Origin: Fimbriosthenelais zetlandica
Lineage: Eukaryota
Reading direction: 5' to 3'
NCBI GenBank assembly: GCA_977030845.1
Contig: OZ365112.1
Span: 34,472,001 to 34,536,000 of the forward strand
Length of the DNA: 64,000 nt
Below the pieces are notes generated by a model. It did no database searches. It was not told the DNA's origin and saw nothing but the letters and a program-made list of their open reading frames with translations. Below, piece after piece: positions 424 to 54,590 of the stretch. Numbering within the stretch: position 1 is the first letter of the stretch; each line of letters begins with the position of its first letter. Position numbers and translations under genes: made by a program.

Positions 424-3400
424 TTAACTGCTCTCATCTTCCAGTATAATCCGCTTGGTGGCCTGGACTTCCTCGGGGGTGGGTGGTTCGGCTGGGGGGG
501 TAGCTTCCCTCTTGAAGAGCAGTTGGCGAGCCCTGGACCTTGTCAAAGGCCCTGGGTGGGAAGCTAAGTTACTCAAGTCCTCTTGAGTAGGTGCAGGGAG
601 AGTGGGATCCAAGGGGTGAAGCATTGAGGGTGCAGGGTGATGAGATGTGGGTTCATGTAGAGTTGAATCCTCACAGCTGGTAGCAGGTGTAGATTGTAGC
701 GGCAGGGGTAGATCAGGTGGGGGTCTCACTACAATCTTGGTGGCAACAGGTGAAGGAGTGAAGGGGCCAGCCCTTTTCCTACTTCGTGGGGTAGAGGTCA
801 TTTGATCCTCAGCTTCCTGTGCCTCCTCCTGACGTCTCAGGGGAGGGAGGAACTGAGTTTCTTCATTAGCAACTGCTGGTGGGGGTGGAGCTTCATGATA
901 GGGTGGCTCCTCTTCCATGGGTGCTTCTGGTGGGTTAACTGGTACGTTAGTTGGTTGGGGGATTAGTACTGGGTCATTTAGGGGCAGAGCTCCCTCCATA
1001 TTGGGAGCCTGCAAGGGAACGGGAACAGGGTGAACATACACATTTAGGTTTCCAGCTGGAGCTACTCTCAGCCCAGCCGGGGGAGGCAATTGGCCGGCTC
1101 TCTGCCTTGCCCTTGCCCTTGCCCTATTGTCACGCCCCTGTCTTGCCCTAGGCTGCCTTCTTCTCAAGTTTTCCCAGTCTGCTTCCCCATCCACCAACCT
1201 TATCCTCATTCTATTAATAACTTTCCTCTCTCCATTTGGACCTCTGAGCATGACAGCAGTCCCTCTCACCCCGGTTACAGTATAACCATGGTCCCATTTA
1301 GGGTCTAGAGGGGCTGCACCTCCAGCCTGCACTACAACTGAGTCACCTATTCTGAGCTCACCTGCATTGGCTCTCTCTCGGAGGCGTCTATAATTAGACT
1401 GCCTGCTCCGCTCAGTCCTTTCAGCCGCTTCTCTAAATGCATGGGTCAATTCTTGCAATCTCTGACTCAGGGCATCCTCCTCTGCCCCTTCTGGGACAGG
1501 GAAAATGCGGGTAAAGGGGGTTCTAGGTTTTCTACCATATGTAAGGAAAAAGGGACTATAGCCTGTGACTGAGGAGACAGAAATACGATGAGCCCATAGA
1601 GTTGGCCCAAGATGATCTTCCCACTCCTCAGGACGGGCATTAATAAATTTTCGCAATATACCCTTGAATGTTCTATGGAATCTTTCTATTTTAGAATTTG
1701 TTTGAGGATGAAAGGGAGAGGAGTGTCTTACATCCACTCCCAGAGATTGCAAATAACCCTTTACAAGTCTATTTTTGAATTCCAATCCTTGATCTGTGAT
1801 AGTGACCTCTGGGGGCCCATTCCTGGGAATGTACTCATTCTCTAAGAAGTGGAGTACATTGGTGGCCGTCTTCTGTGGTATTGGTTTGACTTCCACCCAC
1901 CCAGTGCAATGATCAATGACTGTAATTACATATTTATTACCAAAGCGAGACAAAGGAAATGGACCACAAAGATCCATCCCCACAATCTGGCCTGGGTATT
2001 TTGCTATTGGCATAGCAGTAGGTGGGATCCTTTCATGAGTGGTTCTATTTACAGCACACCTAGCACACTTAGATATGACAGAATAGCAATCCTTCCTCAT
2101 GGTAGGCCATTTGTAGGCCTCCAATAAACGATCTAGCGTTTTTCTCATTCCAAGATGTCCCACCTCACAATGGGCTCTTCTTATGCACCTGAATCGAGCA
2201 GAGGGGGGCAAGACTAACCTGGGATAGGCAGCCCGCCCAGGAGGAGGTTCTAATGTATACAATAGCCCATTTTCTACTGTATACTGATCCTCATCCCTGA
2301 CACCCAAAATATATTCAGGCATCTCCCTTTGCTCTCTGCTGATTTCTGCTTTCTCCAGGTCATCAAACTCCCATGGAATTTCCTCCATTTCCTCCATGGC
2401 CCATACTTCTAATGAACAGAGAGTTTGGCCAGAAGTGGATTCATTTACCTGGGGTCTGATCCTGGAGAGCATATCAGCCCTCTCATTATCCTTACCTCTT
2501 CTATATTCAATAGGTGCACCATACTCCGCAAGGAGTACAGCCCACCTTTGAATTTTTGTATTCTTTATTTCTGATCTGAACAAGGCTTTCAAAGGGCGAT
2601 GGTCAGTGAATATCTTAAATTCAGCCCCATAAAGGTAAGGTCTAAGCTTTGTAAGTGCATAAACGATCGCAAAGCCCTCACGTTCAAAAGTGCTCCAGCG
2701 TAGTGCTGAGCCTGACAATTGCTTGGAGACATACTGTATAGGCCGTTCAATGCCATTCTTGTCTAACTGACACAATATAGCCCCCACACAATAATCTGAG
2801 CTATCTGTATATAAAATATAGGGCTTATTGAGTTGGGGATGAGCCATAACCTGATCAGACATCAAAAGGTCCCTCAGTGTTTCCCAAGCCTTCTGCTGTT
2901 CAGTTCCCCACTTGAACCTTGCATTTTTCTTGGTTAAAATTACCAGAGGATGTGCGACCTTTGCATAATTCTGAACTAACTGGCGATAAAATCCCGTGGC
3001 CCCTAGGAAACTCCTGATTCCGGTAACATTAGTAGGTGGTGCCATCTCTCGGATTGCTCTTACCTTCTCAGGGTCAGAACGTATTCCTCCACCACTCACT
3101 AAATACCCCAAAAGCTTCACTTCAGGTTGGCAAAAAGTACACTTAGATAGCTTTAAAGTCAGATGATATTCTTGGAGCTTTTTGAAAATGAGATAGAGGT
3201 GCTTCTCATGCTCCTGTTTGTTTCTTGAGTATACAATAATGTCATCAAGGAAGACCATTACAAATTTACCAATATACTCAGAAAAAACCTTGTTCATCAT
3301 GCGTTGGAAGATGGCAGGACTAGTTGTTAAGCCAAAAGGTAACTTCAAAAATTCATACAATCCTCTATGGCAAACAAAAGCTGTCTTCTCAACACTATCA

Positions 3401-4251
3401 GGATCCATGGGAACCTGCCAATACCCACTCTTGAGATCAAGAGTAGTAAAGACAGAGCTCCCTGTGAGGCCGTCAAATATATCCTGAATATGGGGAAGAG
3501 GGTGAGCATCCTTTTTAACGACCTCATTTAACTTTCTATAGTCAACACAAAACCGAATAGAACCATCTTTCTTAGGGACCAATGTTATTGGACTAGCCCA
3601 GGGGGATGAGCTGGGTTGTATCACACCTAATTTTAACATCTCCTCTATTTCGTTATCAACTATTTCCCTTTTATTCAATGGTAGCCTGTAAGGCCTTTGA
3701 TTTATGGGTCTAGCATCTCCTGTTTCTATTTTAGCTGTTATTGCAGTAGTAGCTGGGAGAGAACCAGGTTTACTAAACACCATTGGAAACCTCTTTTGCC
3801 AAATGTCAGCATCAGTACTTACTTCTGATACCTGAATATCTTCTTTCCCAGCAATAATGGAATTGTACACTTTGCCTAAAATATCAATTTTGCGTCTGTC
3901 ACAATGAATGACAGCTTGTAGGTTTTCCAATGCATCTCCCCCTAACAGTAAATCATGGTGTAGTTGTTTAACTACATATACAGGAAATTGACACCCATCT
4001 ATATCAATAATGGTTCTACCCAGAGTTGGAAGACTATGCCCACTGAGAGATCTTAAATTTTCCCCTTTGAATAACACTTCAGAACGATGGCTAGCTTTGC
4101 AGATAGCCTGCCATACATTCTGTCTGATCAAACTTCTACTCGCGCCAGTATCAATTAGTGCACATCTCCGTAGGCCTGCCAACCTAACAGAAATGCACAG
4201 TCTTTGATCCGGCGCAGCTATTCCCCCTGTAGGAAAGGGTTTAAATTTTGC
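424..4251 (-). CDS. pol: Gypsy Pol polyprotein (PR-RT-RNaseH-IN) with long low-complexity C-terminal tail
   Basis: Protease LIDTGAS; RT motifs WASPITLVPKKDG, RFCVDYRKLN, LPFGL and FLDDII; RNase H YTDSS and FTDHRPL; integrase HHCC zinc finger, MDLCGP, TDQG and IERFHRT. The ORF track starts at 4182, but the frame is open upstream to a TAG at 4252-4254 and overlaps the end of gag. Confidence 0.96.
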   Translation of the reverse strand, partial: AKFKPFPTGGIAAPDQRLCISVRLAGLRRCALIDTGASRSLIRQNVWQAICKASHRSEVLFKGENLRSLSGHSLPTLGRTIIDIDGCQFPVYVVKQLHHDLLLGGDALENLQAVIHCDRRKIDILGKVYNSIIAGKEDIQVSEVSTDADIWQKRFPMVFSKPGSLPATTAITAKIETGDARPINQRPYRLPLNKREIVDNEIEEMLKLGVIQPSSSPWASPITLVPKKDGSIRFCVDYRKLNEVVKKDAHPLPHIQDIFDGLTGSSVFTTLDLKSGYWQVPMDPDSVEKTAFVCHRGLYEFLKLPFGLTTSPAIFQRMMNKVFSEYIGKFVMVFLDDIIVYSRNKQEHEKHLYLIFKKLQEYHLTLKLSKCTFCQPEVKLLGYLVSGGGIRSDPEKVRAIREMAPPTNVTGIRSFLGATGFYRQLVQNYAKVAHPLVILTKKNARFKWGTEQQKAWETLRDLLMSDQVMAHPQLNKPYILYTDSSDYCVGAILCQLDKNGIERPIQYVSKQLSGSALRWSTFEREGFAIVYALTKLRPYLYGAEFKIFTDHRPLKALFRSEIKNTKIQRWAVLLAEYGAPIEYRRGKDNERADMLSRIRPQVNESTSGQTLCSLEVWAMEEMEEIPWEFDDLEKAEISREQREMPEYILGVRDEDQYTVENGLLYTLEPPPGRAAYPRLVLPPSARFRCIRRAHCEVGHLGMRKTLDRLLEAYKWPTMRKDCYSVISKCARCAVNRTTHERIPPTAMPIAKYPGQIVGMDLCGPFPLSRFGNKYVITVIDHCTGWVEVKPIPQKTATNVLHFLENEYIPRNGPPEVTITDQGLEFKNRLVKGYLQSLGVDVRHSSPFHPQTNSKIERFHRTFKGILRKFINARPEEWEDHLGPTLWAHRISVSSVTGYSPFFLTYGRKPRTPFTRIFPVPEGAEEDALSQRLQELTHAFREAAERTERSRQSNYRRLRERANAGELRIGDSVVVQAGGAAPLDPKWDHGYTVTGVRGTAVMLRGPNGERKVINRMRIRLVDGEADWENLRRRQPRARQGRDNRARARARQRAGQLPPPAGLRVAPAGNLNVYVHPVPVPLQAPNMEGALPLNDPVLIPQPTNVPVNPPEAPMEEEPPYHEAPPPPAVANEETQFLPPLRRQEEAQEAEDQMTSTPRSRKRAGPFTPSPVATKIVVRPPPDLPLPLQSTPATSCEDSTLHEPTSHHPAPSMLHPLDPTLPAPTQEDLSNLASHPGPLTRSRARQLLFKREATPPAEPPTPEEVQATKRIILEDESS

Positions 4252-5414
4252 CTAGGAGGCGGCATGCTATGAATTACAGAGGCCACTACCTCCTGCAATT
4301 GACGGTACCTATGGGGGCACTCCCTAGCGAAGTGGCCCTCTACCCCACACTCATAACACTTATTGGGCCCCCTAAAACGTGTGTTATTTTGCTGGGGTTT
4401 ACCTCTCCCCTGCCCATTATTTCTATTTTGCTCAAAACCTCCCACTTTCTTTTTGTTTCCCTTCTTGTTTCCTTTTTGGAATCCCCCCTGCGCTGCCCCG
4501 CCTCCCCCCACAGCACCCCCTACATTGGCGGCAGCCATAGGCATACAGGGGTTAACATAAGGCATGTAGGGTGGAAAACATGGGTATTGAGGTGCCGACT
4601 GTGGCATAATAACAGTTGGAGGTGGGTATTGCGTCTGACCTTGTGTTGGATTTGCACTGTTTTGTAACTGGCAAATAAATTTTTCGATTCTATCTAACCT
4701 ATTAGTATTAACCGAATGGCCAGTTGGTTGGGGAAGAGCACCAATGTCCATTGGCTCTTCGTTGCGGGCAGCAGCAGATGGCATACCAGCAAGTGCAACA
4801 GTATGAGCTGCAGCTGAAGCTGCATTAATTGCTGCCTGCAAATTTTCAGGTCTTCCAGCAAAAACATCATGCCTGATTTTCTCCTCCCTGAGACCAGAAA
4901 TAAAATGTCGGATCAGCTGTTCCTGAATTAGTTGGTTTTCTAAATCTGCAGCAGGATAAGCCTGCTGCGCTGCTAAAAGAAACACCCTACCATAGGCCTT
5001 GGCATCTTCATAGGGCCTCTGGTGGATTTCAGAAATTTTGGCCCTCAATTGCTGGGCTTCCTCTTCCGACATGAACAGCCTATTTATCTCTGCTCTCACG
5101 TTGACCCAAGTCCTATGGGCAACTGGTGTGTTACCTAAATAACCTGCCACACACCTAGCCAGGGACCCTTGGGCCAACACACCCAACAGTTCGAGAGTCA
5201 GGCCATCATTGGCAACGCAATATGCCCTAGCTCTCTCTATTGCGTCGAGCCATTCTCTTAGCGTCTCTTTGTTGGAGCCATCATTACCTCCTATCATGTT
5301 TCCATGACGCTCCATTCGCCTCCTGCATTCTTTGATAGAGGCATTTCGCTCTCTGAGCTGATCAGGAGTGAGAGCAGCTATTTGCACAGCCGTCAAATTC
5401 CAATTTACATCCAT
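4218..5414 (-). CDS. gag: Gypsy Gag (398 aa) with CCHC zinc knuckle
   Basis: QEQLIRHFISGL capsid-like segment, EPMDIG motif and CYECGVEGHFAREC knuckle; lies directly upstream of pol. Confidence 0.93.
   Translation of the reverse strand: MDVNWNLTAVQIAALTPDQLRERNASIKECRRRMERHGNMIGGNDGSNKETLREWLDAIERARAYCVANDGLTLELLGVLAQGSLARCVAGYLGNTPVAHRTWVNVRAEINRLFMSEEEAQQLRAKISEIHQRPYEDAKAYGRVFLLAAQQAYPAADLENQLIQEQLIRHFISGLREEKIRHDVFAGRPENLQAAINAASAAAHTVALAGMPSAAARNEEPMDIGALPQPTGHSVNTNRLDRIEKFICQLQNSANPTQGQTQYPPPTVIMPQSAPQYPCFPPYMPYVNPCMPMAAANVGGAVGGGGAAQGGFQKGNKKGNKKKVGGFEQNRNNGQGRGKPQQNNTRFRGPNKCYECGVEGHFARECPHRYRQLQEVVASVIHSMPPPRQNLNPFLQGE
4239..4248 (-). promoter_or_regulatory. -1 ribosomal frameshift slippery site AAAUUUAAAC at the gag/pol overlap
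   Basis: Gag frame reads CAA AAT TTA AAC, giving A AAU UUA and U UUA AAC in X XXY YYZ register. The -1 frame (AAA TTT AAA CCC) is the pol frame. Confidence 0.75.
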
Positions 5415-6751: not shown

Positions 6752-7597
6752 CTGAAAATACAATAATATTCATAATTAAATATCAGACACTATGGCTTTG
6801 TCGGTTCAATGGGGACAGTAGTGGATGGTGGGATGATGGGCCAGAGAAAGGAGGAACTACTAATACGGTTTAATTTCTGGTTCCTCAAGGCTATGGTCGG
6901 GAGAAAACTAGAGTAAAATACTCACCAGTTCCACAAATAGGAGAGACCCAGGAAAGTTGTGCCAATTTTTCGATTTTTCAATATTTTTTAGCATATTCAA
7001 CTTAAATGGAGAACTTACTATAAAGTAGTACTATTTTTTTGCAATATGGGCTGGGTAAATGAAATCCCAGAATTTCCTCATATATAAATACTATATAACA
7101 CATGGTCAACTGGCTCAACTCTCCTTCGGACTGAGGAAAGTTGAGCATGGCGTTAGATGGCTTGGGGAGAGTTGAGCCATGTGTTGTAAATTATTTAAAT
7201 GTATTTAAAACTGAGGCTTGTGGTTTCGTGGTTGGAAGAAGGGGCGTGGGGGCTATGGTGGACCTTCCCAGGTCCTTTCTCTCTTTATTCTCCCTTCTCC
7301 TATTTCTCTATCTCCTCTACTATATCTCCTCTCCTGTTTGCCTTCTCTCTTCTACTTTCTTCTCCATCCCTGGCACGGATTTACGGGCTTAACCTAGGGT
7401 TAACTCTAACACTAACCTGGTGCCCCCACCCCCCTTTGGAAAAATCCTGGATCCGCCCCTGCATCCCCTGTCTGTATATGACTTCTCCCATCTATCTCTC
7501 TTCTCTCATCTTTATTTTGTCGCCTCGTGGGCATTGGCCAATACTCTGGCAAAGATGATGCTATAGTAAAGTGTATGATGTTTAAAAACAAACTTAC

Positions 7598-46460: not shown

Positions 46461-46898
46461 AATTTTTGTTGATTTTGTTTTGTTGATTATGCACTGGAAG
46501 CACACACCGACTCCCTTGTATCAATCAACTGTCAACTGGCATGAGGCAAGAATCTAACCCAGGCTGTCCTGTACATTATCTTCCTGTTCCATTTCCTCAT
46601 TATCCGCGTGTGCTTCGCTGTTTAAAGATCTTTATACCATACCAAATATTTACATCTAGCACAAAAGGGAGAAATAGGTTTTATATATGTTGATTCTGCC
46701 CAGTGAAGATTCATATAGTGCATGAAAAATATATTATTTATGTACATAATTAACAATCATATTACTACATACCTTATCACTGCAACCACTTCTCCATAGT
46801 TGTAAGGAGCACAAAGACTGTACCATTTTGAATGATGTGGGCTTTTGTGTGAATAAGGCCACTGCCAGTAACAAACCGAGTAACAAACAATATACATG

Positions 46899-47504
46899 TG
46901 TAATGCCCCTAGGTATGTTCTATTGACCACCTCTAGGGTATTAACATTGCAAGGTAAAGCCCCTTGGTGTGGTGTCTCGACCACCCCCAAGGTATTTTAT
47001 AGCTAGGTGTATATATGTAACCACTGTACATAATATCCAATGTTAGAGTTCATACTTTACTCACTTGGTTAGTATGAGTATTGGTGTCTCGCCACTTGAG
47101 GGCGCCAATACTCAGCTGTACAACTTATATGTATTATATTATCTAAAGTAAGGATTTACATCCTTTTTACTTAATTCACACCTTTCATGTTACGGTACAT
47201 TTTTATCCAATGTAATATAAACTGTATACTGTCATGTAGATGCTGGTCATCTTATTATCTTGTCAGTATCAAATATGTAATGCTATTGTACCACCATGTA
47301 TATTAATGTAGGCATGGCCATGACACCCATGACCATGCCAGGTGTGTTTGTAAATCTACTGTACATCTACTGCAAGATTGCCCTCGGCAATAAAGTTGAA
47401 GACGTGAGGAAAAACTTTGTTCTGTTATACATATCCTTCGCTTTGTTACCGAGTACTGGTTCACACAAAGATGGCATAAGCTCCCGAACGCCTAGACCAT
47501 TACA
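46899..47504 (+). repeat. 5' LTR (606 bp)
   Basis: Direct repeat of 53651-54256; followed by AT and the PBS. Confidence 0.96.
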
Positions 47505-47506
47505 AT

Positions 47507-47524
47507 TGGTGCCGTGACCAGGAT
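47507..47524 (+). promoter_or_regulatory. PBS complementary to tRNA-His
   Basis: TGGTGCCGTGACCAGGAT versus the canonical His PBS TGGTGCCGTGACTCGGAT. Confidence 0.85.
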
Positions 47525-48078
47525 ATCCTTGTGAAACAACCCTGAGTTGTAGTAGGAAGGATAGCTGGTAGAGAGTCTGTGCTGTTGTTAAACATAAAAC
47601 AAAATTCTGGAGCTTTGATCTTCAGAACCTTGACTGATGCTGGTTTGAGATCGCTCATTAATGAGGCCCAGGCCTTGGATATGGATGATTAGATCACTCC
47701 TTCAGTGCCTGGTATTGGTACTTGCCCCAAAAGTATGTGCTCAACAGCTCTTGAGACATTGGTGCATAACCAGTTAGAACAGATATGAATGTATTTCAAA
47801 CCCTGCCCCAAAAATGGGGCTAGTGATATACAAAGACAAAATGTCTGGAGAATGGGATAATTGTGACAAACTTCTTGGTTGGAGTCACAATTTATCACCA
47901 AGTTTGAAAAACTTTGGAATGGTTTCTCCATTGAATAGTGTTGGTTGGAGCATTTTTTAGCTATAGTGAACATAGGTGTTGGACCGAGTCTGTCCTGATG
48001 CCAGCTATAGCAATGTTTAGGCCTATATACACATGCATGACAAGTGAAAGCAAATATAGTGACTGTGTAAATGGTCCC

Positions 48079-48350
48079 AAAATAACAATCATTCATGAGG
48101 AATGACCTTTGACAAAGAAGTCTGGTACCCTCATTGTTATTTGAATTGTTCACAATATAATTATGAAATACAATTGTGAAATAACAATCATTCATGGGGT
48201 CCCACCTTTGTGAAGAAAAGGCTGGTACCCTCAATATTAATTGAATGGTTCACAACATAATTATGAAATACATTGTGAAATAACAATCAGTCACAGGGAA
48301 AGACCTTTGTGAAAAGAAGGCTTGTATCCTCAAAGTTAATTGAATGATTT
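48079..48350. repeat. Three diverged 99-bp tandem units inside the LTR element
   Basis: aaataacaatca...acctttg...ggtaccctca...ttgaat recurs at 48079, 48179 and 48278. Confidence 0.85.
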
Positions 48351-51300
48351 GTAACAGATAAAACAATTGAAATATAATAGAGAAATGTAAAATTTCTAAA
48401 GCAGTGAGGAAGCCATGGCAAAATCCAAAGATTTTTGTTAGACCTTCACAAACTGCATTAAGACCTTTTTCTTGGCTAGGAGGTGCAGAGCCCGCCAAGG
48501 AAAGATATGTCAAAAGTATAACACGAGTGGTAAGCTGACGTAATGCCTTCCTTACGTGTAAAGAGAAGGTTATTATAGGTGAAAAGGCCCATTCTGTTAT
48601 ACAGATTGTACTAAATAAGACAAACATTATCTCTGTCAGTGGGAGTTAGGCCTGTTAATGACAAAGCTGGAGACTTTGATAGTGGCCCTCCAAAAACTTA
48701 TATTAAAAAAAACAACTAATGTCAGTCGTCGCCAGGTTGGGGTGTACTGGTGGCTGTAGTTATGCACAAATTAAGGGAAGTTCAAGAGACGAAGGGTTAA
48801 AAATGCCCTCTAGGATTACCGTTGCGAACAACCCTTGTGCTATTAAACATAAACCACAGAGTATTACACATGCACTGATGCGTTTGTCGGGGAATTGGAC
48901 AAAAACCCTTGCAGAAGTCAAGCCTTGTCCATCCCAGGGACTAAGAAGAAAGTTGGTAAGAGGAATTTCGCGACCCCTCTGAATACTCAGGTCTTGAGGA
49001 ACCCCACATATATATGCTCTGCCTCCGTACAAGGGCAGGCAGTGGATCTTAGGACCCTTAGTCCCACCGAATTAGTCAAACAAATTTTGTGTCTCCTACC
49101 ACGGGCTGATGGTAAAGAGCAGTGATACATTCCTGTATTGAAATTCTCCCAGGGAGGATAGTTGGGCATTGAGAGGATAGACTATAGGAAACCCTGGCGG
49201 CGTGCAAGTCCCTTGGTGATAAGATAGCTGTACCAATGATTGATAAACATCTATCTTAGAAATTTAAAATTTCTATGTTTCCCTGGCTGCCAAAAACCAC
49301 CACTGTGACCGACGATGGAGGTAGCGGTGGCAGATGGAGAAAAGACATATAGACTGTAGGTTTATTACAAAATCCCGTTTTAAGTGGCCTGCTCCACCTT
49401 AATTATGCTTGAAAGCGCCAAATCCACTGAACCGCCTTCTTAGGATATGGGAGACAAATGGCAGTGGATAAGTCTCATGACTGGCTGGAGACGGCAGCAG
49501 CATATAGGTGAAGTATTGAATGGTTTGGCCGTATAAGAGTTATTAAAGTTTGACATAAAGGCATTATACACCGCTGGCAAAGCTCGGCTAGCACTGCTCA
49601 TGCATGGATTTTCAGGCAACTTATGGCTAGACAAAACCAAAATAGGCAGGGATTGACAGTCTGGACTGTGGAAAGCCTGGCGACATGCTAGTCCCATGGT
49701 GAGATGATCGCTGTCCCACTGATTAGTCCCGCGGGAATGCCCCCTGAAACTACAAGAAAATGCTACTTAGTGTTCCATAGCAATAGGAATCTCTCTTGAA
49801 GCATCAATGTTCCCATTGGAACACAAATAATTGTTTACCTTTCACAGATTTGTCACCCATCCCAGCGGACACCATCTGTGAGACAATGACCCGGTATAAA
49901 GACGGTTTTTCCTGGTAGAAAATGCTAGGTTAAATTACTCTAACATTTGACTGGTTGGTATCGAGTTTGAACCCAATGACTGCTGCCAGAAATAGCAGAA
50001 GTCGAGGCTCGAGTCGCCAAAACGGGACCAGAAATCATTATGAGTAGAAAAACAAAACATGTCAAATATGCGGGAGTAAAATCTGTCAAGCCTATAGAAA
50101 ATTCTGCAAGCCTATAGAAAAGGTTCCTATTGTAGGGACTAGGGTCAGATTGCTAAGACAGAAAGTTAATGAAAACAAAACTAAATCATCCAGTCTTGCA
50201 TAACTTAAAAGTTATTAGAATACTGAATGAAAATAATTTCATAAGATGACTGCCCCTGTACCATAGATCAATAGGGTCTGGAAACTATTTTGTCGATTGT
50301 TTTTTTGTTTCTTCAGCCCTAAATCTAGGAACATGTATTATGTAGCCTACAGGTGGTCATAAAGTGAAATCATAGAATGATATATGTCTAACCTGGGTTT
50401 ATTCCTGTCCCGAGCTGATGGTTTCTGACATGAGTGCATGGTGAAAGACTCGGAAACTTTGAACTGGAATTTAAACCTAGGATCGTTATAGATGAATGAA
50501 ATTTAGTGGAGATCTGTTCCCGCTAAAATATGAATACTATGCTTGTGTCAAACATAGTGAATGAATTGGCTATAGTAAGGGGAAAGATATATACCAGTGA
50601 ATTACCTGGGCCCCCGAGCCTAAGTACTCATTCAAATTGTTAAAGAACAAGTTAAACAAAACTAAAGCTCTGCACTGACGCGGGAAAGTAAGTGACAGGC
50701 TGTGTGTAGATCCCATGTGCACTTCTATAAAAGAAACATGGTGGTGAGAGTAAACTTCTGACGGTAAAAATCCCATGGATTCTGTCGGCTTTTGAAAGCA
50801 CCAGCACACCAAAAATGACTAAATAGACACTCCGAGTTGAGGCTATATTGTTTCCTCGGATATAGAGATGGTTACTCACACTTTCAATAATGGAGTAACA
50901 TCGACAGTAATTAGTTAATGACCTTACCATATCGTCTGCAGTCCAACAGATGGGTTTGATCATGAATTTGTGAGTGGAACATGTTGTCAGACTGGTATTA
51001 GTACTAGCCCGCTAGTATGACCATGGCAATAACTGTTCTACTAATTTTGTAATGTGTATTGGAGAAATTTGAAATTACACAAATTTTCTCCTACAAATAA
51101 TTATGCTGTACACAGAACTGAATAGTCGGCCCCTCTACATTATAGTCTAGAGGGCGGGTTTGATTGGGTCACCCGGGAGCCTGCATTTGGTGTCTGAAAA
51201 GGCAATCATGAACTGGTCATGTGTAGTTGATACAAAGACAACCTCGGTATATAGCCAAACAAAACAGGTTGATGGACGCACAAGATAGTGCAAAGTCATA

Positions 51301-51944
51301 AATGCAACCTGGTGTTCCGTGGACATGCAAGAATACCCTGTGAAGTACAGGAAAAATGCAATGATTGTCCCGGTAAGAGGGCATTTACCTCTGGAGCCAT
51401 CTCAAAATGTGGTCCGAGGATGAAAACTCCGTTGGAAGTCATTCAACATAATTATCACAGAAATGACCTACATAATTCATCAATTGCTAACAGCCATACT
51501 CCCTCGAGTACTGTTAAAAAACTTTACTCGCTAAAGTTGGAATTTCGAAAAGTGTGATTATAGAAGTTAAACGAGAGCTTGTAAGGCGTGGTAGGCCAAG
51601 TAAACAGTTCAGAGAAACTTTCGTTGCAGAGTCTAACACCACCCATAAAAGTAACGAACTTCGTAGGGTAAGGATGAAGTCTAAACTTTGTATCAGGCCC
51701 CCGGCACAGAGGATAAAAACCCAAGTGACTGTGACAGTGCCTCGAACAATTGTGCAAGACAAATCCCCCTGTAGTTACCGCCGTCCCCGGCGTTGAATAA
51801 ACCGGGAAATTGACGGACAATTATGATAAAGAAATTCAACAAATGGTGCAACAATTAAAGAACACAACGAGAAGACAGTCTATGGATACAGGGCCTATCA
51901 GATCTTAGAGTTTCGGTCGCTCAGCTGACTAGGTATCCTTCATA

Positions 51945-52275
51945 TGATTTGGTAATAGGAGATGTCTGAGGGATAACCCATTCCATTCTTCTAATAATTA
52001 ATGGTCCCCTCTGGCTAGAGGGGCAAGGGGAGTCGAAATCTTGGGTCTCCTAAAACTCATTTGGTAATAAGAAACATCTAAGGGACGACCCGCTCCATTT
52101 TATACAATGGTCCCTATCGGCTGATAGAGTAAGGGAAGTCGAAATCTTAGGTTTCATACTATTCCACTTGATAATGGGAGATATCTGAGGGACGACCCGT
52201 TCCATTATTATGCTATGTTTTATGGTCCCTATCGGCTGATAGAGCAAGGGAAGTCGAAAGCTCAGGATTTCGAGG
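51945..52275 (+). ncRNA. Three tandem ~110-nt units with conserved, covarying secondary structure (unknown structured RNA)
   Basis: Units at about 51947, 52059 and 52166. Hairpin CCCCTCT-GGCT-AGAGGGG versus CCCTATC-GGCT-GATAGAG. Closing stem CTGAG/CTTGG, CTAAG/CTTAG, CTGAG/CTCAG. Confidence 0.55.
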
Positions 52276-53650
52276 ATTTCCTGTTAAAACAAGTGATAGA
52301 AGGAGTAGTCAATGGGCCGGATTCCCGTTAAGACCACTGACCTACACCTTCCCTGGTACATGTTGACCAAAATTACATAATCATGATTGCATTAGTTGAT
52401 TGCTGCGTGCTATTCCTCTGTAATGTCACCAGCCAGTCTGCTCATGATTAAGTTAGTTATAAATGGTCAATAAAAATGTATATGATTTTCACATTGAAAA
52501 ATTTCTGCATTTGAACTGGTCAAATCCCCTCTTCTTAAATTAGATTGGGATACCAGCTAGTGAAGTGGACTGAAATGGGAGTGATTAAGGAACGGTGAAG
52601 ACAATAGAAGTCTAGAATTTCGCCCCCTGATCATTGTTCCCCAAGCCACTAAACAGAAACTGGCTGAAAAGTCCAGATGTAGTATAAATGTGTGAAACAA
52701 TATTTTAACTGTAGAAATACAATATTTTTTTATGAAAATACAAAAAAAATTAATTTCAAAACTGTAAAACATATAGAGCAACAAATGAAGGCACGATAAC
52801 TGCCATTATAAGCCACAGGCCAGAGCCTGCTGAATAATGATTATGTTAAACATAACATTACTTTTGTGCAACATGCTCGGAAGTAATAAAATGATCAACA
52901 CAAATAATCAGCCCCTCCTTGACTTCTGTACAGACAAGAGTGGCTAGATTAGGAATTCGTAATTCAGAACCGAAAGAGACTGGATGCCAATTCTATAAAG
53001 AAGTAGAAGAAAACATCTTTTTCTCTTTTCCTGACATATGCACAACAATATCTCTATGTTACTGAAATACAAAAATGTCGGTAATGCCAAAAATGACTGC
53101 TAGTTTGAGTCTTTTTGTCCGATGAGGTTTGGTTACCCGTTAGCCCAGGTGTTGTCGACTGATATGGTTGGATCGAGCTTCATCATCAGCTTACTGCCAG
53201 TGATGTCCGGAGACTGCCATTGACTCGTCCGATGCTACAGACAGGCCCTCCAGCCTTCGCCAAGGATGTGTCTACCAGCCTCCTACCTCTACATCGTCAC
53301 TCTTCACAATTTATGAACTATGACATGGCCGGAGCCATATTTTAAGCCTCAGGAGCTAACAACAGGAGGCCCGTGCTTCGTGAAAATATGTGTATTTTTA
53401 AATTTTCCTCGCGTCAATTTAATCCATGAACATTTAACACCAGCATGTGTTTAAAACTGCACCAATAACATTAATATTATAGTAACTTTCCTAACCATCA
53501 GTTGAGGTATATTGTATCTGTATAATGTTACCTACAGCCTCACCTGATGTGTAAGTTGCCATTAATGTTTTCATTTATCTAGCCTACGCTGTATTTTAAA
53601 ACAAAAAAAATTTCCTTTGTAAATTTTTTTTCTCCTTGGGAGGGGGGTAT

Positions 53651-54256
53651 TGTAATGCCCCTAGGTATGTTCTATTGACCACCTCTAGGGTATTAACATT
53701 GCAAGGTAAAGCCCCTTGGTGTGGTGTCTCGACCACCCCCAAGGTATTTTATAGCTAGGTGTATATATGTAACCACTGTACATAATATCCAATGTTAGAG
53801 TTCATACTTTACTCACTTGGTTAGTATGAGTATTGGTGTCTCGCCACTTGAGGGCGCCAATACTCAGCTGTACAACTTATATGTATTATATTATCTAAAG
53901 TAAGGATTTACATCCTTTTTACTTAATTCACACCTTTCATGTTACGGTACATTTTTATCCAATGTAATATAAACTGTATACTGTCATGTAGATGCTGGTC
54001 ATCTTATTATCTTGTCAGTATCAAATATGTAATGCTATTGTACCACCATGTATATTAATTTAGGCATGGCCATGACACCCATGACCATGCCAGGTGTGTT
54101 TGTAAATCTACTGTACATCTACTGCAAGATTGCCCTCGGCAATAAAGTTGAAGACGTGAGGAAAAACTTCGTTCTGTTATACATATCCTTCGCTTTGTTG
54201 CCGAGTACTGGTTCACACAAAGATCGCATAAGCTCCCGAACGCGTAGACCATTACA
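53651..54256 (+). repeat. 3' LTR (606 bp)
   Basis: Preceded by the PPT gggagggggg; near-identical to the 5' LTR. Confidence 0.96.
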
Positions 54257-54590
54257 CATGTAATAATATGTGGTGTCAGCAGTAGGGCCGTACAGTATTT
54301 TTGAATGGGGCCTACCTCTTTTCATGTTCCTTATCATTGAGGTTTTTTGGTGCCTATGCCTGCACAGACAGCAGTGTGGAGTTTGGGCATCTTGGTGGCA
54401 GCTGCCTCCAGAAGGCTTCCCCAGCTAAATTGTAGAATGGAAGTTGAAGTAGTTATCCCTCCCATTGATGGCATTGGCTCCTTGAGAAAAGCTTTCATCT
54501 CACACTTGATTCGTGCATATACTACTGCACTGAGTGCCCTTTGCACCTGCTTTGTATTTCAATCCAGGATTAGTTTCCAAGCACTGTTGG
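54257..54590 (-). pseudogene. Transposase remnant (Academ/AcademH-like N-terminal region) that continues at 46898 beyond the LTR element
   Basis: ILQFSWGSLLEAAATKMPKLHTAV on the right flank and KMVQSLCSLQLWRSGCSDK (46770-46898) on the left flank, same strand. Confidence 0.45.

What the first reader, a model, noticed from the sequence alone, without database searches (positions are those of the whole stretch)
51945..52275. Triplicated, covarying structured-RNA motif in a non-coding LTR element
Three ~110-nt units differ in sequence but keep their base pairing. Between unit 1 and units 2/3, four consecutive pairs of one hairpin change compensatorily (T-A/C-G, C-G/T-A, T-A/A-T, C-G/T-A) around an invariant GGCT loop. 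A second CCAT..ATGG hairpin keeps its stem while the loop length varies. The closing stem's middle pair is G-U, A-U and G-C in the three units. GA(C/T)..CCC, GGTCCC and AGTCGAAA are conserved, and AGGGAC/GTCCCT offers an alternative or pseudoknot pairing. This pattern suggests selection on RNA structure. Its place in a young element lacking gag/pol suggests a cis-acting packaging or dimerisation signal, or an unclassified ribozyme; both functions are inference. It does not fit the canonical hammerhead core.
Basis: partly seen in the sequence, partly recalled or inferred. Interest (0 to 1): 0.75.

Follow-up and report, generated by a model that had tools for sequence, protein, structure and literature searches.

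The report
Triplicated folded RNA module after pol
A retrovirus-like jumping gene of this animal and its gene-less derivative both carry, just after the polymerase gene, three tandem ~95-base stretches that keep one Y-shaped RNA fold despite about 25% sequence change; this is most likely a protein-docking signal on the element's RNA, a new example of a known kind of signal, and its function is untested.

Summary
Three units (51958-52050, 52070-52156, 52177-52271, + strand) share one fold: a two-part closing stem, a GAC/GUC-CCC/GGG helix and a three-way junction with two hairpins. Of all pair cells, 95% are standard pairs, and six pairs change on both sides. RNAalifold recovers the same fold without guidance.

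New context:
- The host is a 7.4-kb non-coding LTR element (LARD) read on the + strand.
- Its autonomous partner is an 11.6-kb three-ORF Ty3/gypsy element. It carries the same triple block about 130 nt after the pol stop codon.
- The block is the best-conserved segment between the two: 98% identity, against 95% for the LTRs and 86% for the end of pol.
- A sister gypsy family carries one unit at the same place and strand, with the same fold and further compensatory changes.
- G·U pairs favour the sense RNA.

Weak points:
- Single-sequence folding is no better than shuffled controls.
- Only two families could be sampled.
- Rfam gives no match, and the junction nucleotides are not conserved between the families, so a ribozyme is unlikely.

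Best reading: a multimerised cis-acting protein-binding RNA module, comparable to the RSV direct repeats, CTE or packaging signals. The function is inferred.

The parts
46895..46898 (.). Target-site duplication CATG, 5' copy
   Evidence: Same 4 nt at 54257-54260
46899..47504 (+). 5' LTR, 606 bp, TGTAATG...CATTACA
   Evidence: Aligned with the 3' LTR, 4 differences; repeat D1
47507..47523 (+). Primer-binding site (TGG...), 2 nt after the 5' LTR. It sets the element's sense strand as +.
   Evidence: Read from the sequence; the primer tRNA was not identified
51560..51785 (+). Remnant of the 3' end of pol, 86% identical to the autonomous partner
   Evidence: blastn against L082
51862..51874 (+). 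13-nt box ACACAACGAGAAG, about 96 nt upstream of unit 1. It is a hallmark that follows pol in the whole gypsy clade.
   Evidence: 366 genome copies against 9 for the reversed control. It lies downstream of 23 of 23 pol ends on contigs C1 and C10. It, or a variant with one or two changed bases, is also present in contigs from other samples.
51946..52269 (+). Whole triple block (3 x linker + unit), 98.1% identical to the block in the autonomous partner; the sequence on both sides is dissimilar (no BLAST match upstream)
51958..52050 (+). Unit 1, Y-shaped fold, hairpin B CCCCUCU-GGCU-AGAGGGG
   Evidence: CM R1 108 bits; pair counts
52070..52156 (+). Unit 2; its minimum-free-energy fold equals the consensus fold
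52177..52271 (+). Unit 3
53638..53647 (+). Polypurine tract GGGAGGGGGG, 3 nt before the 3' LTR
53651..54256 (+). 3' LTR
54257..54260 (.). Target-site duplication CATG, 3' copy

Best explanation
Each unit is a roughly 90-nt Y-shaped domain of the element's sense (genomic) RNA. From the outside in, it has a 5-bp outer stem, a small bulge, a 6-bp stem, an asymmetric 3' bulge, a 7-8-position helix, and a three-way junction. The junction carries a variable hairpin A and a 7-bp hairpin B capped by a GGYU tetraloop. The module sits about 130 nt after the pol stop codon of a three-ORF Ty3/gypsy element and has been triplicated in this family. The non-coding derivative in the window keeps it, and that derivative must borrow all its proteins.

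I read it as a multimerised cis-acting protein-binding platform that full-length RNA needs in order to propagate. My rough split is:
- nuclear export or cytoplasmic accumulation of unspliced RNA, like the RSV direct repeats or a CTE: about 0.25;
- Gag/NC-mediated encapsidation: about 0.2;
- a reverse-transcription role: about 0.1.

Shown: the fold, its covariation, its strand, its position, and its retention in the derivative. Inferred: protein binding and every specific function.
For: - Fold and covariation in three paralogous units that differ at 27% of paired positions.
- With all genomic copies and the sister family there are 13 distinct rows: 94% of cells are paired, 12 pairs change on both sides, and 0 of 500 shuffles reach this.
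- Unguided RNAalifold gives the same helices, and 10 of 27 pairs have compensatory changes.
- The sister family (66% aa identity in the integrase C-terminus) has one unit about 190 nt after the end of the pol match, on the sense strand. The hit scores 20.8 bits with E 0.007, and its MFE fold has the same architecture.
- In the sister unit, hairpin B has three G·U pairs. The sense strand folds at -23.2 kcal/mol, the antisense strand at -13.3.
- G·U occurs in 13 pair columns, A·C in 3.
- The autonomous partner carries the block between pol and ORF3.
- Identity between the block in the window and the block in the partner is 98.1%, against LTR 95%, pre-LTR 90.6% and pol end 86%. The probability of 6 or fewer differences in 324 nt at the LTR rate is 0.002.
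- The spacing from box to unit is 90-96 nt in both families.
- Gag has a CCHC knuckle and ORF3 has a basic stretch and zinc-finger-like motifs, so element-encoded RNA binders exist.
Against: - Folding energies are not better than shuffles.
- Effectively there are only four independent sequences from two related families, and paralogous units are not independent.
- The CM-fitted alignment leans towards the structure it was built on.
- The near-identity of the block between the derivative and its partner includes loops and linkers. That fits recent template-switch recombination at least as well as selection.
- More distant relatives (pol 57% identity or less) have the box but no detectable unit.
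- There are no transcript, probing or binding data.
Confidence: 0.55

Rival explanations
1. The block has no function of its own. It is a tandem repeat in a fast-rearranging spacer, its hairpins are kept by mutational mechanisms (templated quasi-palindrome correction, unequal recombination), and its high identity between the derivative and the partner reflects recent template switching between co-packaged RNAs.
For: Loops and linkers are as conserved as stems between the derivative and the partner, and the boundaries coincide exactly with the array. Segment identities along the derivative form a mosaic from 73% to 98%, which suggests recombination. Folding z-scores are unremarkable.
Against: The sister family keeps the same multi-helix architecture as a single, non-repeated unit with different stem sequences. 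Covariation occurs in four separate helices, not in one palindrome. G·U asymmetry points to one strand of RNA. Quasi-palindrome correction predicts perfect DNA palindromes, not G·U pairs.
Confidence: 0.2
2. It is a DNA-level regulatory array: tandem transcription-factor sites acting as an enhancer or internal promoter for the downstream ORF3.
For: The block lies in the pol-ORF3 spacer. In related elements from other samples this spacer holds TATA-like and CCAAT-like strings upstream of ORF3 (read by eye).
Against: Compensatory changes and G·U pairs are not expected for factor-binding sites. The derivative keeps the block but has lost ORF3.
Confidence: 0.1
3. It is an exonuclease-stalling or RNA-stability element: tandem three-way-junction domains, like the duplicated xrRNA and dumbbell domains of flavivirus 3' UTRs, that protect or generate a 3' co-terminal sub-genomic RNA carrying ORF3.
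For: The units are tandem three-way-junction domains upstream of a downstream ORF. This is an analogy from my own knowledge of flavivirus 3' UTRs; no tool result supports it.
Against: No flaviviral or plant-virus xrRNA family matched in Rfam. The one candidate pseudoknot (AGGGAC/GUCCCU) competes with covarying helices and is absent from the sister family. The derivative has no ORF3 to express.
Confidence: 0.07
4. It is a self-cleaving ribozyme of an unclassified type, repeated in tandem as in retrozymes.
For: Tandem units of about 110 nt in a non-autonomous LTR element recall retrozymes. A CUGA...GAAA pair of strings is present.
Against: No ribozyme family matches at E up to 10. CUGAG is a stem strand that covaries and reads CUAAG in unit 2. 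Junction and bulge nucleotides are not conserved between the families. Self-cleavage inside a genomic RNA that must be copied whole would be harmful.
Confidence: 0.03

Closest known systems
Direct repeat (DR) elements of Rous sarcoma virus
   Same: They are repeated non-coding cis elements of about 115 nt in the 3' part of a retroelement genome. They act on unspliced RNA (transport or accumulation), with reported pleiotropic effects on replication, and at least one copy must be kept (review PMC3856414).
   Different: There is no sequence similarity and no Rfam model to test. The DRs flank src rather than lying head to tail after pol. The host here is an invertebrate Ty3/gypsy element. Function here is untested.
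Constitutive transport element (MPMV/SRV) and the RNA transport elements of IAP and related retroelements
   Same: They are structured cis RNA with internally repeated protein-binding sites that let intron-containing full-length RNA leave the nucleus through NXF1 (PMC3856414). That multimerised copies act more strongly is from my own knowledge.
   Different: The CTE is one long stem with two internal loops, not a Y-shaped junction. It lies next to the 3' LTR. No homology was detected.
Rev-response element with Rev (complex retroviruses)
   Same: It is a structured RNA bound by an element-encoded basic protein (PMC3856414; PMC4829213 abstract). The partner element here encodes an extra non-env ORF3 with a basic stretch and zinc-finger-like motifs.
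   Different: Nothing shows that ORF3 binds RNA. The RRE is one large multi-stem domain within env. This is an analogy only.
Retroviral packaging signals with G-rich tetraloops bound by NC zinc knuckles (e.g. HIV-1 SL3 GGAG; from my own knowledge)
   Same: Both have short stable hairpins capped by a GG-containing tetraloop (here GGCU or GGUU), present in several copies. Gag here has one CCHC knuckle.
   Different: Known packaging signals lie in the 5' leader, not after pol. The loop here lacks the 3' G.
Retrozymes (non-autonomous LTR elements or tandem repeats carrying hammerhead ribozymes; from my own knowledge)
   Same: Both involve a non-coding LTR element with repeated small structured RNA.
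   Different: There is no hammerhead core. The units lie inside the element, not in the LTRs, and the coding partner shares them.

Membership tests
Hammerhead ribozyme | Unpaired catalytic core CUGANGA ... GAAA ... UH around a three-helix junction | tested here: not met
   The CUGAG string is one strand of a stem that covaries (G-U, A-U, G-C) and reads CUAAG in unit 2. The junction strands are GUU, U and CAA. No Hammerhead model matches at E up to 10.
Other curated self-cleaving ribozymes in Rfam (e.g. HDV-like, twister, pistol, hatchet, hairpin) | A match to the family covariance model | tested here: not met
   cmscan of 51700-52500 against all 4227 families, permissive filters, E up to 10: only a chance osmY match. 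Gathering scan of the whole window: nothing. No separate descriptor search for the HDV double pseudoknot was run.
Self-cleaving ribozyme (any) | Site-specific self-cleavage | not testable with these tools
   Needs in-vitro transcription.
Conserved structured RNA | Base pairs kept through compensatory changes in independent sequences | tested here: met
   12 of 29 pairs change on both sides, 94% of cells are paired, and slid controls give 30-49%. Unguided RNAalifold: 10 of 27 pairs are compensatory. Limitation: two families only.
Conserved structured RNA | Thermodynamic stability above shuffled sequence | tested here: not met
   z = -1.07, -1.27, +0.06 for the units and -1.65 for the sister unit.
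Non-autonomous LTR retrotransposon (LARD) | Two LTRs, PBS, PPT, target-site duplication, no gag/pol, and an autonomous partner with matching ends | tested here: met
   The partner has 93-95% identical LTRs plus gag, pol and ORF3.
Ty3/gypsy (the partner element) | pol domain order PR-RT-RNase H-IN | tested here: met
   Pfam domains in that order on the 1434-aa ORF.
CTE / RTE / RSV-DR type post-transcriptional element | Rescues export or expression of an intron-containing reporter; binds NXF1 or another export factor | not testable with these tools
   This is a functional definition. Only position, repetition and structure resemble these elements.
Small-RNA-derived module (tRNA, 5S, snRNA), as in Cassandra, Helenus and Ajax (PMC10886601) | Similarity to a small RNA gene | tested here: not met
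   ARAGORN finds no tRNA in the window. There are no Rfam hits.

The most novel reading that the evidence does not exclude
The three-ORF gypsy clade is a 'complex' retrotransposon with a Rev/RRE-like axis. Its conserved non-env ORF3 (basic stretch, two CCHH zinc-finger-like motifs, coiled coil) would bind the post-pol RNA region (the 13-nt box and/or the Y-shaped units) to control the export or fate of full-length RNA. The gene-less derivative would parasitise this by keeping a triplicated binding platform.
Probability: 0.1. Interest if true: 0.8.

Novelty: new member of a known kind. Interest (0 to 1): 0.45.

Why it matters
Cis-acting RNA signals are well mapped in vertebrate retroviruses. 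I know of few in invertebrate Ty3/gypsy elements (own knowledge), and two literature searches found no description of this module.

This locus offers a compact, testable candidate. It is a defined fold with natural compensatory variants. It exists in one-copy and three-copy versions. A non-coding derivative must depend on it in cis, and the partner element supplies candidate binding proteins (Gag with a CCHC knuckle, and the zinc-finger-like ORF3).

If the function is confirmed, the module would show how non-autonomous LTR elements are recognised by their helpers. It would also give a new RNA family for annotating this clade.

Tried and rejected
- **Rfam.** The permissive scan of the region and the gathering scan of the window found nothing relevant.
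- **Hammerhead, kink-turn, T-arm-like and tetraloop-receptor readings.** I considered these by eye. I dropped them because the strings involved are strands of covarying helices.
- **Own-genome searches.** Two covariance models and two patterns found only this family (42 units at about 14 loci) and one sister family (9 loci). Only 150 candidates are scored per CM search, so weaker relatives may have been missed.
- **Post-pol regions of 19 further gypsy families.** I did not try to read those letters by another route.
- **Related elements from other samples** (L084-L090, pol 57% identity or less). They have the 13-nt box or a near-exact variant, but no CM hit after pol. Three of these contigs end within 300 nt of pol.
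- **Metagenome pattern scan.** It returned 35 stretches, about the number I estimated by chance. Only one scored with the CM, on a GC-rich contig that I did not examine further.
- **Complement of the 13-nt box elsewhere in the element** (a cyclisation idea). None was found in the element: the 12 matches at up to 3 mismatches (about 16 expected by chance) are the box itself and sites outside it.
- **ORF3 as an envelope protein.** Rejected: it has no hydrophobic segments and no Pfam env domain.
- **ESM Atlas search of ORF3.** It gave only weak leads to C2H2 zinc fingers.

Full report
**What is there**

The window is part of a 447-Mb eukaryotic (animal) assembly. Positions 46899-54256 are an LTR retrotransposon read on the + strand.
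- It has two 606-bp LTRs with 4 differences.
- A TGG... primer-binding site lies 2 nt after the 5' LTR.
- A GGGAGGGGGG polypurine tract lies 3 nt before the 3' LTR.
- The target-site duplication is CATG.
- No sense-strand ORF reaches 90 aa.

**The observation**

Three tandem units lie at 51945-52275. I aligned them (A3) and wrote down the fold that the complementary segments imply. It has:
- a 5-bp outer stem and a 6-bp stem (UCUGAG/CUCAGG type);
- one unpaired G opposite a GAAAU/G bulge;
- GAC/GUC and CCC/GGG separated by a 2x2 loop;
- a three-way junction bearing a CCAU..AUGG hairpin with a variable loop and a 7-bp hairpin capped by GGCU.

On this structure 95.3% of cells are standard pairs, against 27-50% for slid partners. 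Six pairs change on both sides. Units 1 and 2 differ at 15 of 56 paired positions, yet the pairs hold.

RNAalifold, run on an unguided MAFFT alignment of four units and the sister-family unit, predicts the same helices. Folding energies, however, are no better than those of shuffled sequence. I weigh it lightly, because the helices are short.

**Not a known RNA**

Rfam 15 gives nothing relevant, even at E up to 10. ARAGORN finds no tRNA. The hammerhead-like CUGA is a stem strand that covaries.

**Copies**

BLAST, two covariance models and two patterns find about 14 loci in the genome, each with three units that are 97-100% identical. These copies add little independent information.

**The autonomous partner**

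LTR searches revealed 11-12-kb versions with 92-93% identical LTRs. One of them is G000:C38:107694-119301 (loci L079 and L082). It encodes:
- a 659-aa Gag with one CCHC knuckle;
- a 1434-aa PR-RT-RNase H-IN pol;
- a 706-aa ORF3.

The triple block lies at L082 871-1184, about 130 nt after the pol stop codon and about 730 nt before ORF3.

Identity between the derivative and the partner varies by segment:

| Segment | Identity |
|---|---|
| LTRs | about 95% |
| Pre-LTR | 90.6% |
| End of pol | 86% |
| Stretch just upstream of the block | no BLAST match |
| Sequence after the block | no evident similarity in the alignment |
| Triple block | 98.1% (6 of 324 differ, no gaps) |

At the LTR rate, six or fewer differences has probability 0.002. 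The block is the best-kept part of the element. Because its loops and linkers are equally conserved, recent template-switch recombination is a live alternative to selection.

**A sister family**

A search with the integrase C-terminus showed many related families at 53-71% identity.

The model finds a single unit there, on the sense strand, about 190 nt after the end of the pol match (20.8 bits, E 0.007 in 66 kb). Its minimum-free-energy fold has the same architecture:
- the outer and second stems have different sequences;
- the GAC-GA-CCC/GGG-AA-GUC region becomes a continuous 7-bp helix;
- hairpin B becomes CCCUGCU-GGUU-GGUGGGG, with three G·U pairs.

The sense strand folds at -23.2 kcal/mol and the antisense strand at -13.3. 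Nine copies of this family carry the unit.

With this family included there are 13 distinct rows: 94% of cells are paired and 12 pairs change on both sides. G·U appears in 13 pair columns and A·C in 3. That places the structure on the sense RNA.

Between the families, the conserved letters cluster around hairpin B (UGG-N-CCC, the GGYU loop, G-N-G-N-AA). The junction and bulge letters differ, which argues against a catalytic core.

**Wider clade**

About 96 nt upstream of unit 1 lies a 13-nt box, ACACAACGAGAAG.
- It occurs 366 times in the genome, against 9 for the reversed control.
- It follows all 23 pol ends that could be cross-checked on contigs C1 and C10.
- It, or a variant with one or two changed bases, also follows pol in related elements from other samples.

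Those more distant elements (pol 57% identity or less) show no detectable unit. The Y-shaped module is therefore documented in two sister families only. The spacing from box to unit is 90-96 nt in both.

**ORF3**

ORF3 is not an envelope gene. It has no hydrophobic segment, a basic stretch, and an ~80-aa region with two CCHH motifs. That region is shared with the ORF3 of related elements (E 2e-14 to 1e-6).

**Interpretation**

Shown:
- a conserved multi-helix fold on the sense RNA;
- a fixed position after pol;
- multimerisation in one family;
- preferential retention in a derivative that depends on proteins supplied in trans.

Inferred: it is a protein-binding cis signal.

The closest analogues are the 115-nt direct repeats of Rous sarcoma virus and the CTE/RTE class of export elements (PMC3856414). 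A packaging role through the Gag knuckle is about equally plausible. A ribozyme is unlikely.

I file it as a new member of the known kind 'retroelement cis-acting structured RNA'. It is of moderate interest, and its function is open.

Noticed in passing
window 51862-51874; also L082 783-795, L083 minus strand (box starts at base 213 of the reverse complement), L084-L090: A 13-nt box, ACACAACGAGAAG, lies just after (once overlapping) the pol stop codon in every family of this gypsy clade that I checked, and (exact or with one or two changed bases) in related elements from other samples. It occurs 366 times in the genome against 9 for the reversed control. It is not a polypurine tract, and no complement was found in the 5' leader. 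Its function is unknown.
   Followed up: partly
L082 1915-4035 (G000:C38:115914-118034): The autonomous partner encodes a 706-aa third ORF that is not an envelope protein. It has a basic stretch near residue 75-86, two CCHH zinc-finger-like motifs at residues ~285-348 that are conserved in the ORF3 of related elements, and a coiled-coil-like tail.
   Followed up: partly
window 48080-48371: A second tandem array lies inside the derivative: about three ~100-nt units, each with a long internal inverted repeat. It is absent from the autonomous partner. A weak CM hit on the minus strand (E 0.21) is probably chance.
   Followed up: no
L082 1319-1404; L083 minus strand ~1720-1640: A pair of ~70-nt direct repeats (GTTAGTTCGC ... 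GGCGCCACC) lies downstream of the units in the partner. Similar strings appear in the sister family, where only one exact GTTAGTTCGC was confirmed. The repeats are missing from the derivative.
   Followed up: no
L087 ~7150-7250; L089 ~7150-7300: In related elements from other samples, TATA-like and CCAAT-like strings lie upstream of ORF3. This suggests an internal promoter for the third gene. I read these by eye only.
   Followed up: no
window 424-5414 (- strand): Another Ty3/gypsy element with intact gag (398 aa, zinc knuckle) and pol (1252 aa). No copy of the 13-nt box lies near it, so it probably belongs to a different clade.
   Followed up: no
L084, L085, L086: Public contigs that carry the closest pol relatives end 180-300 nt after pol. 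Assemblies may break there, possibly at repeats.
   Followed up: no
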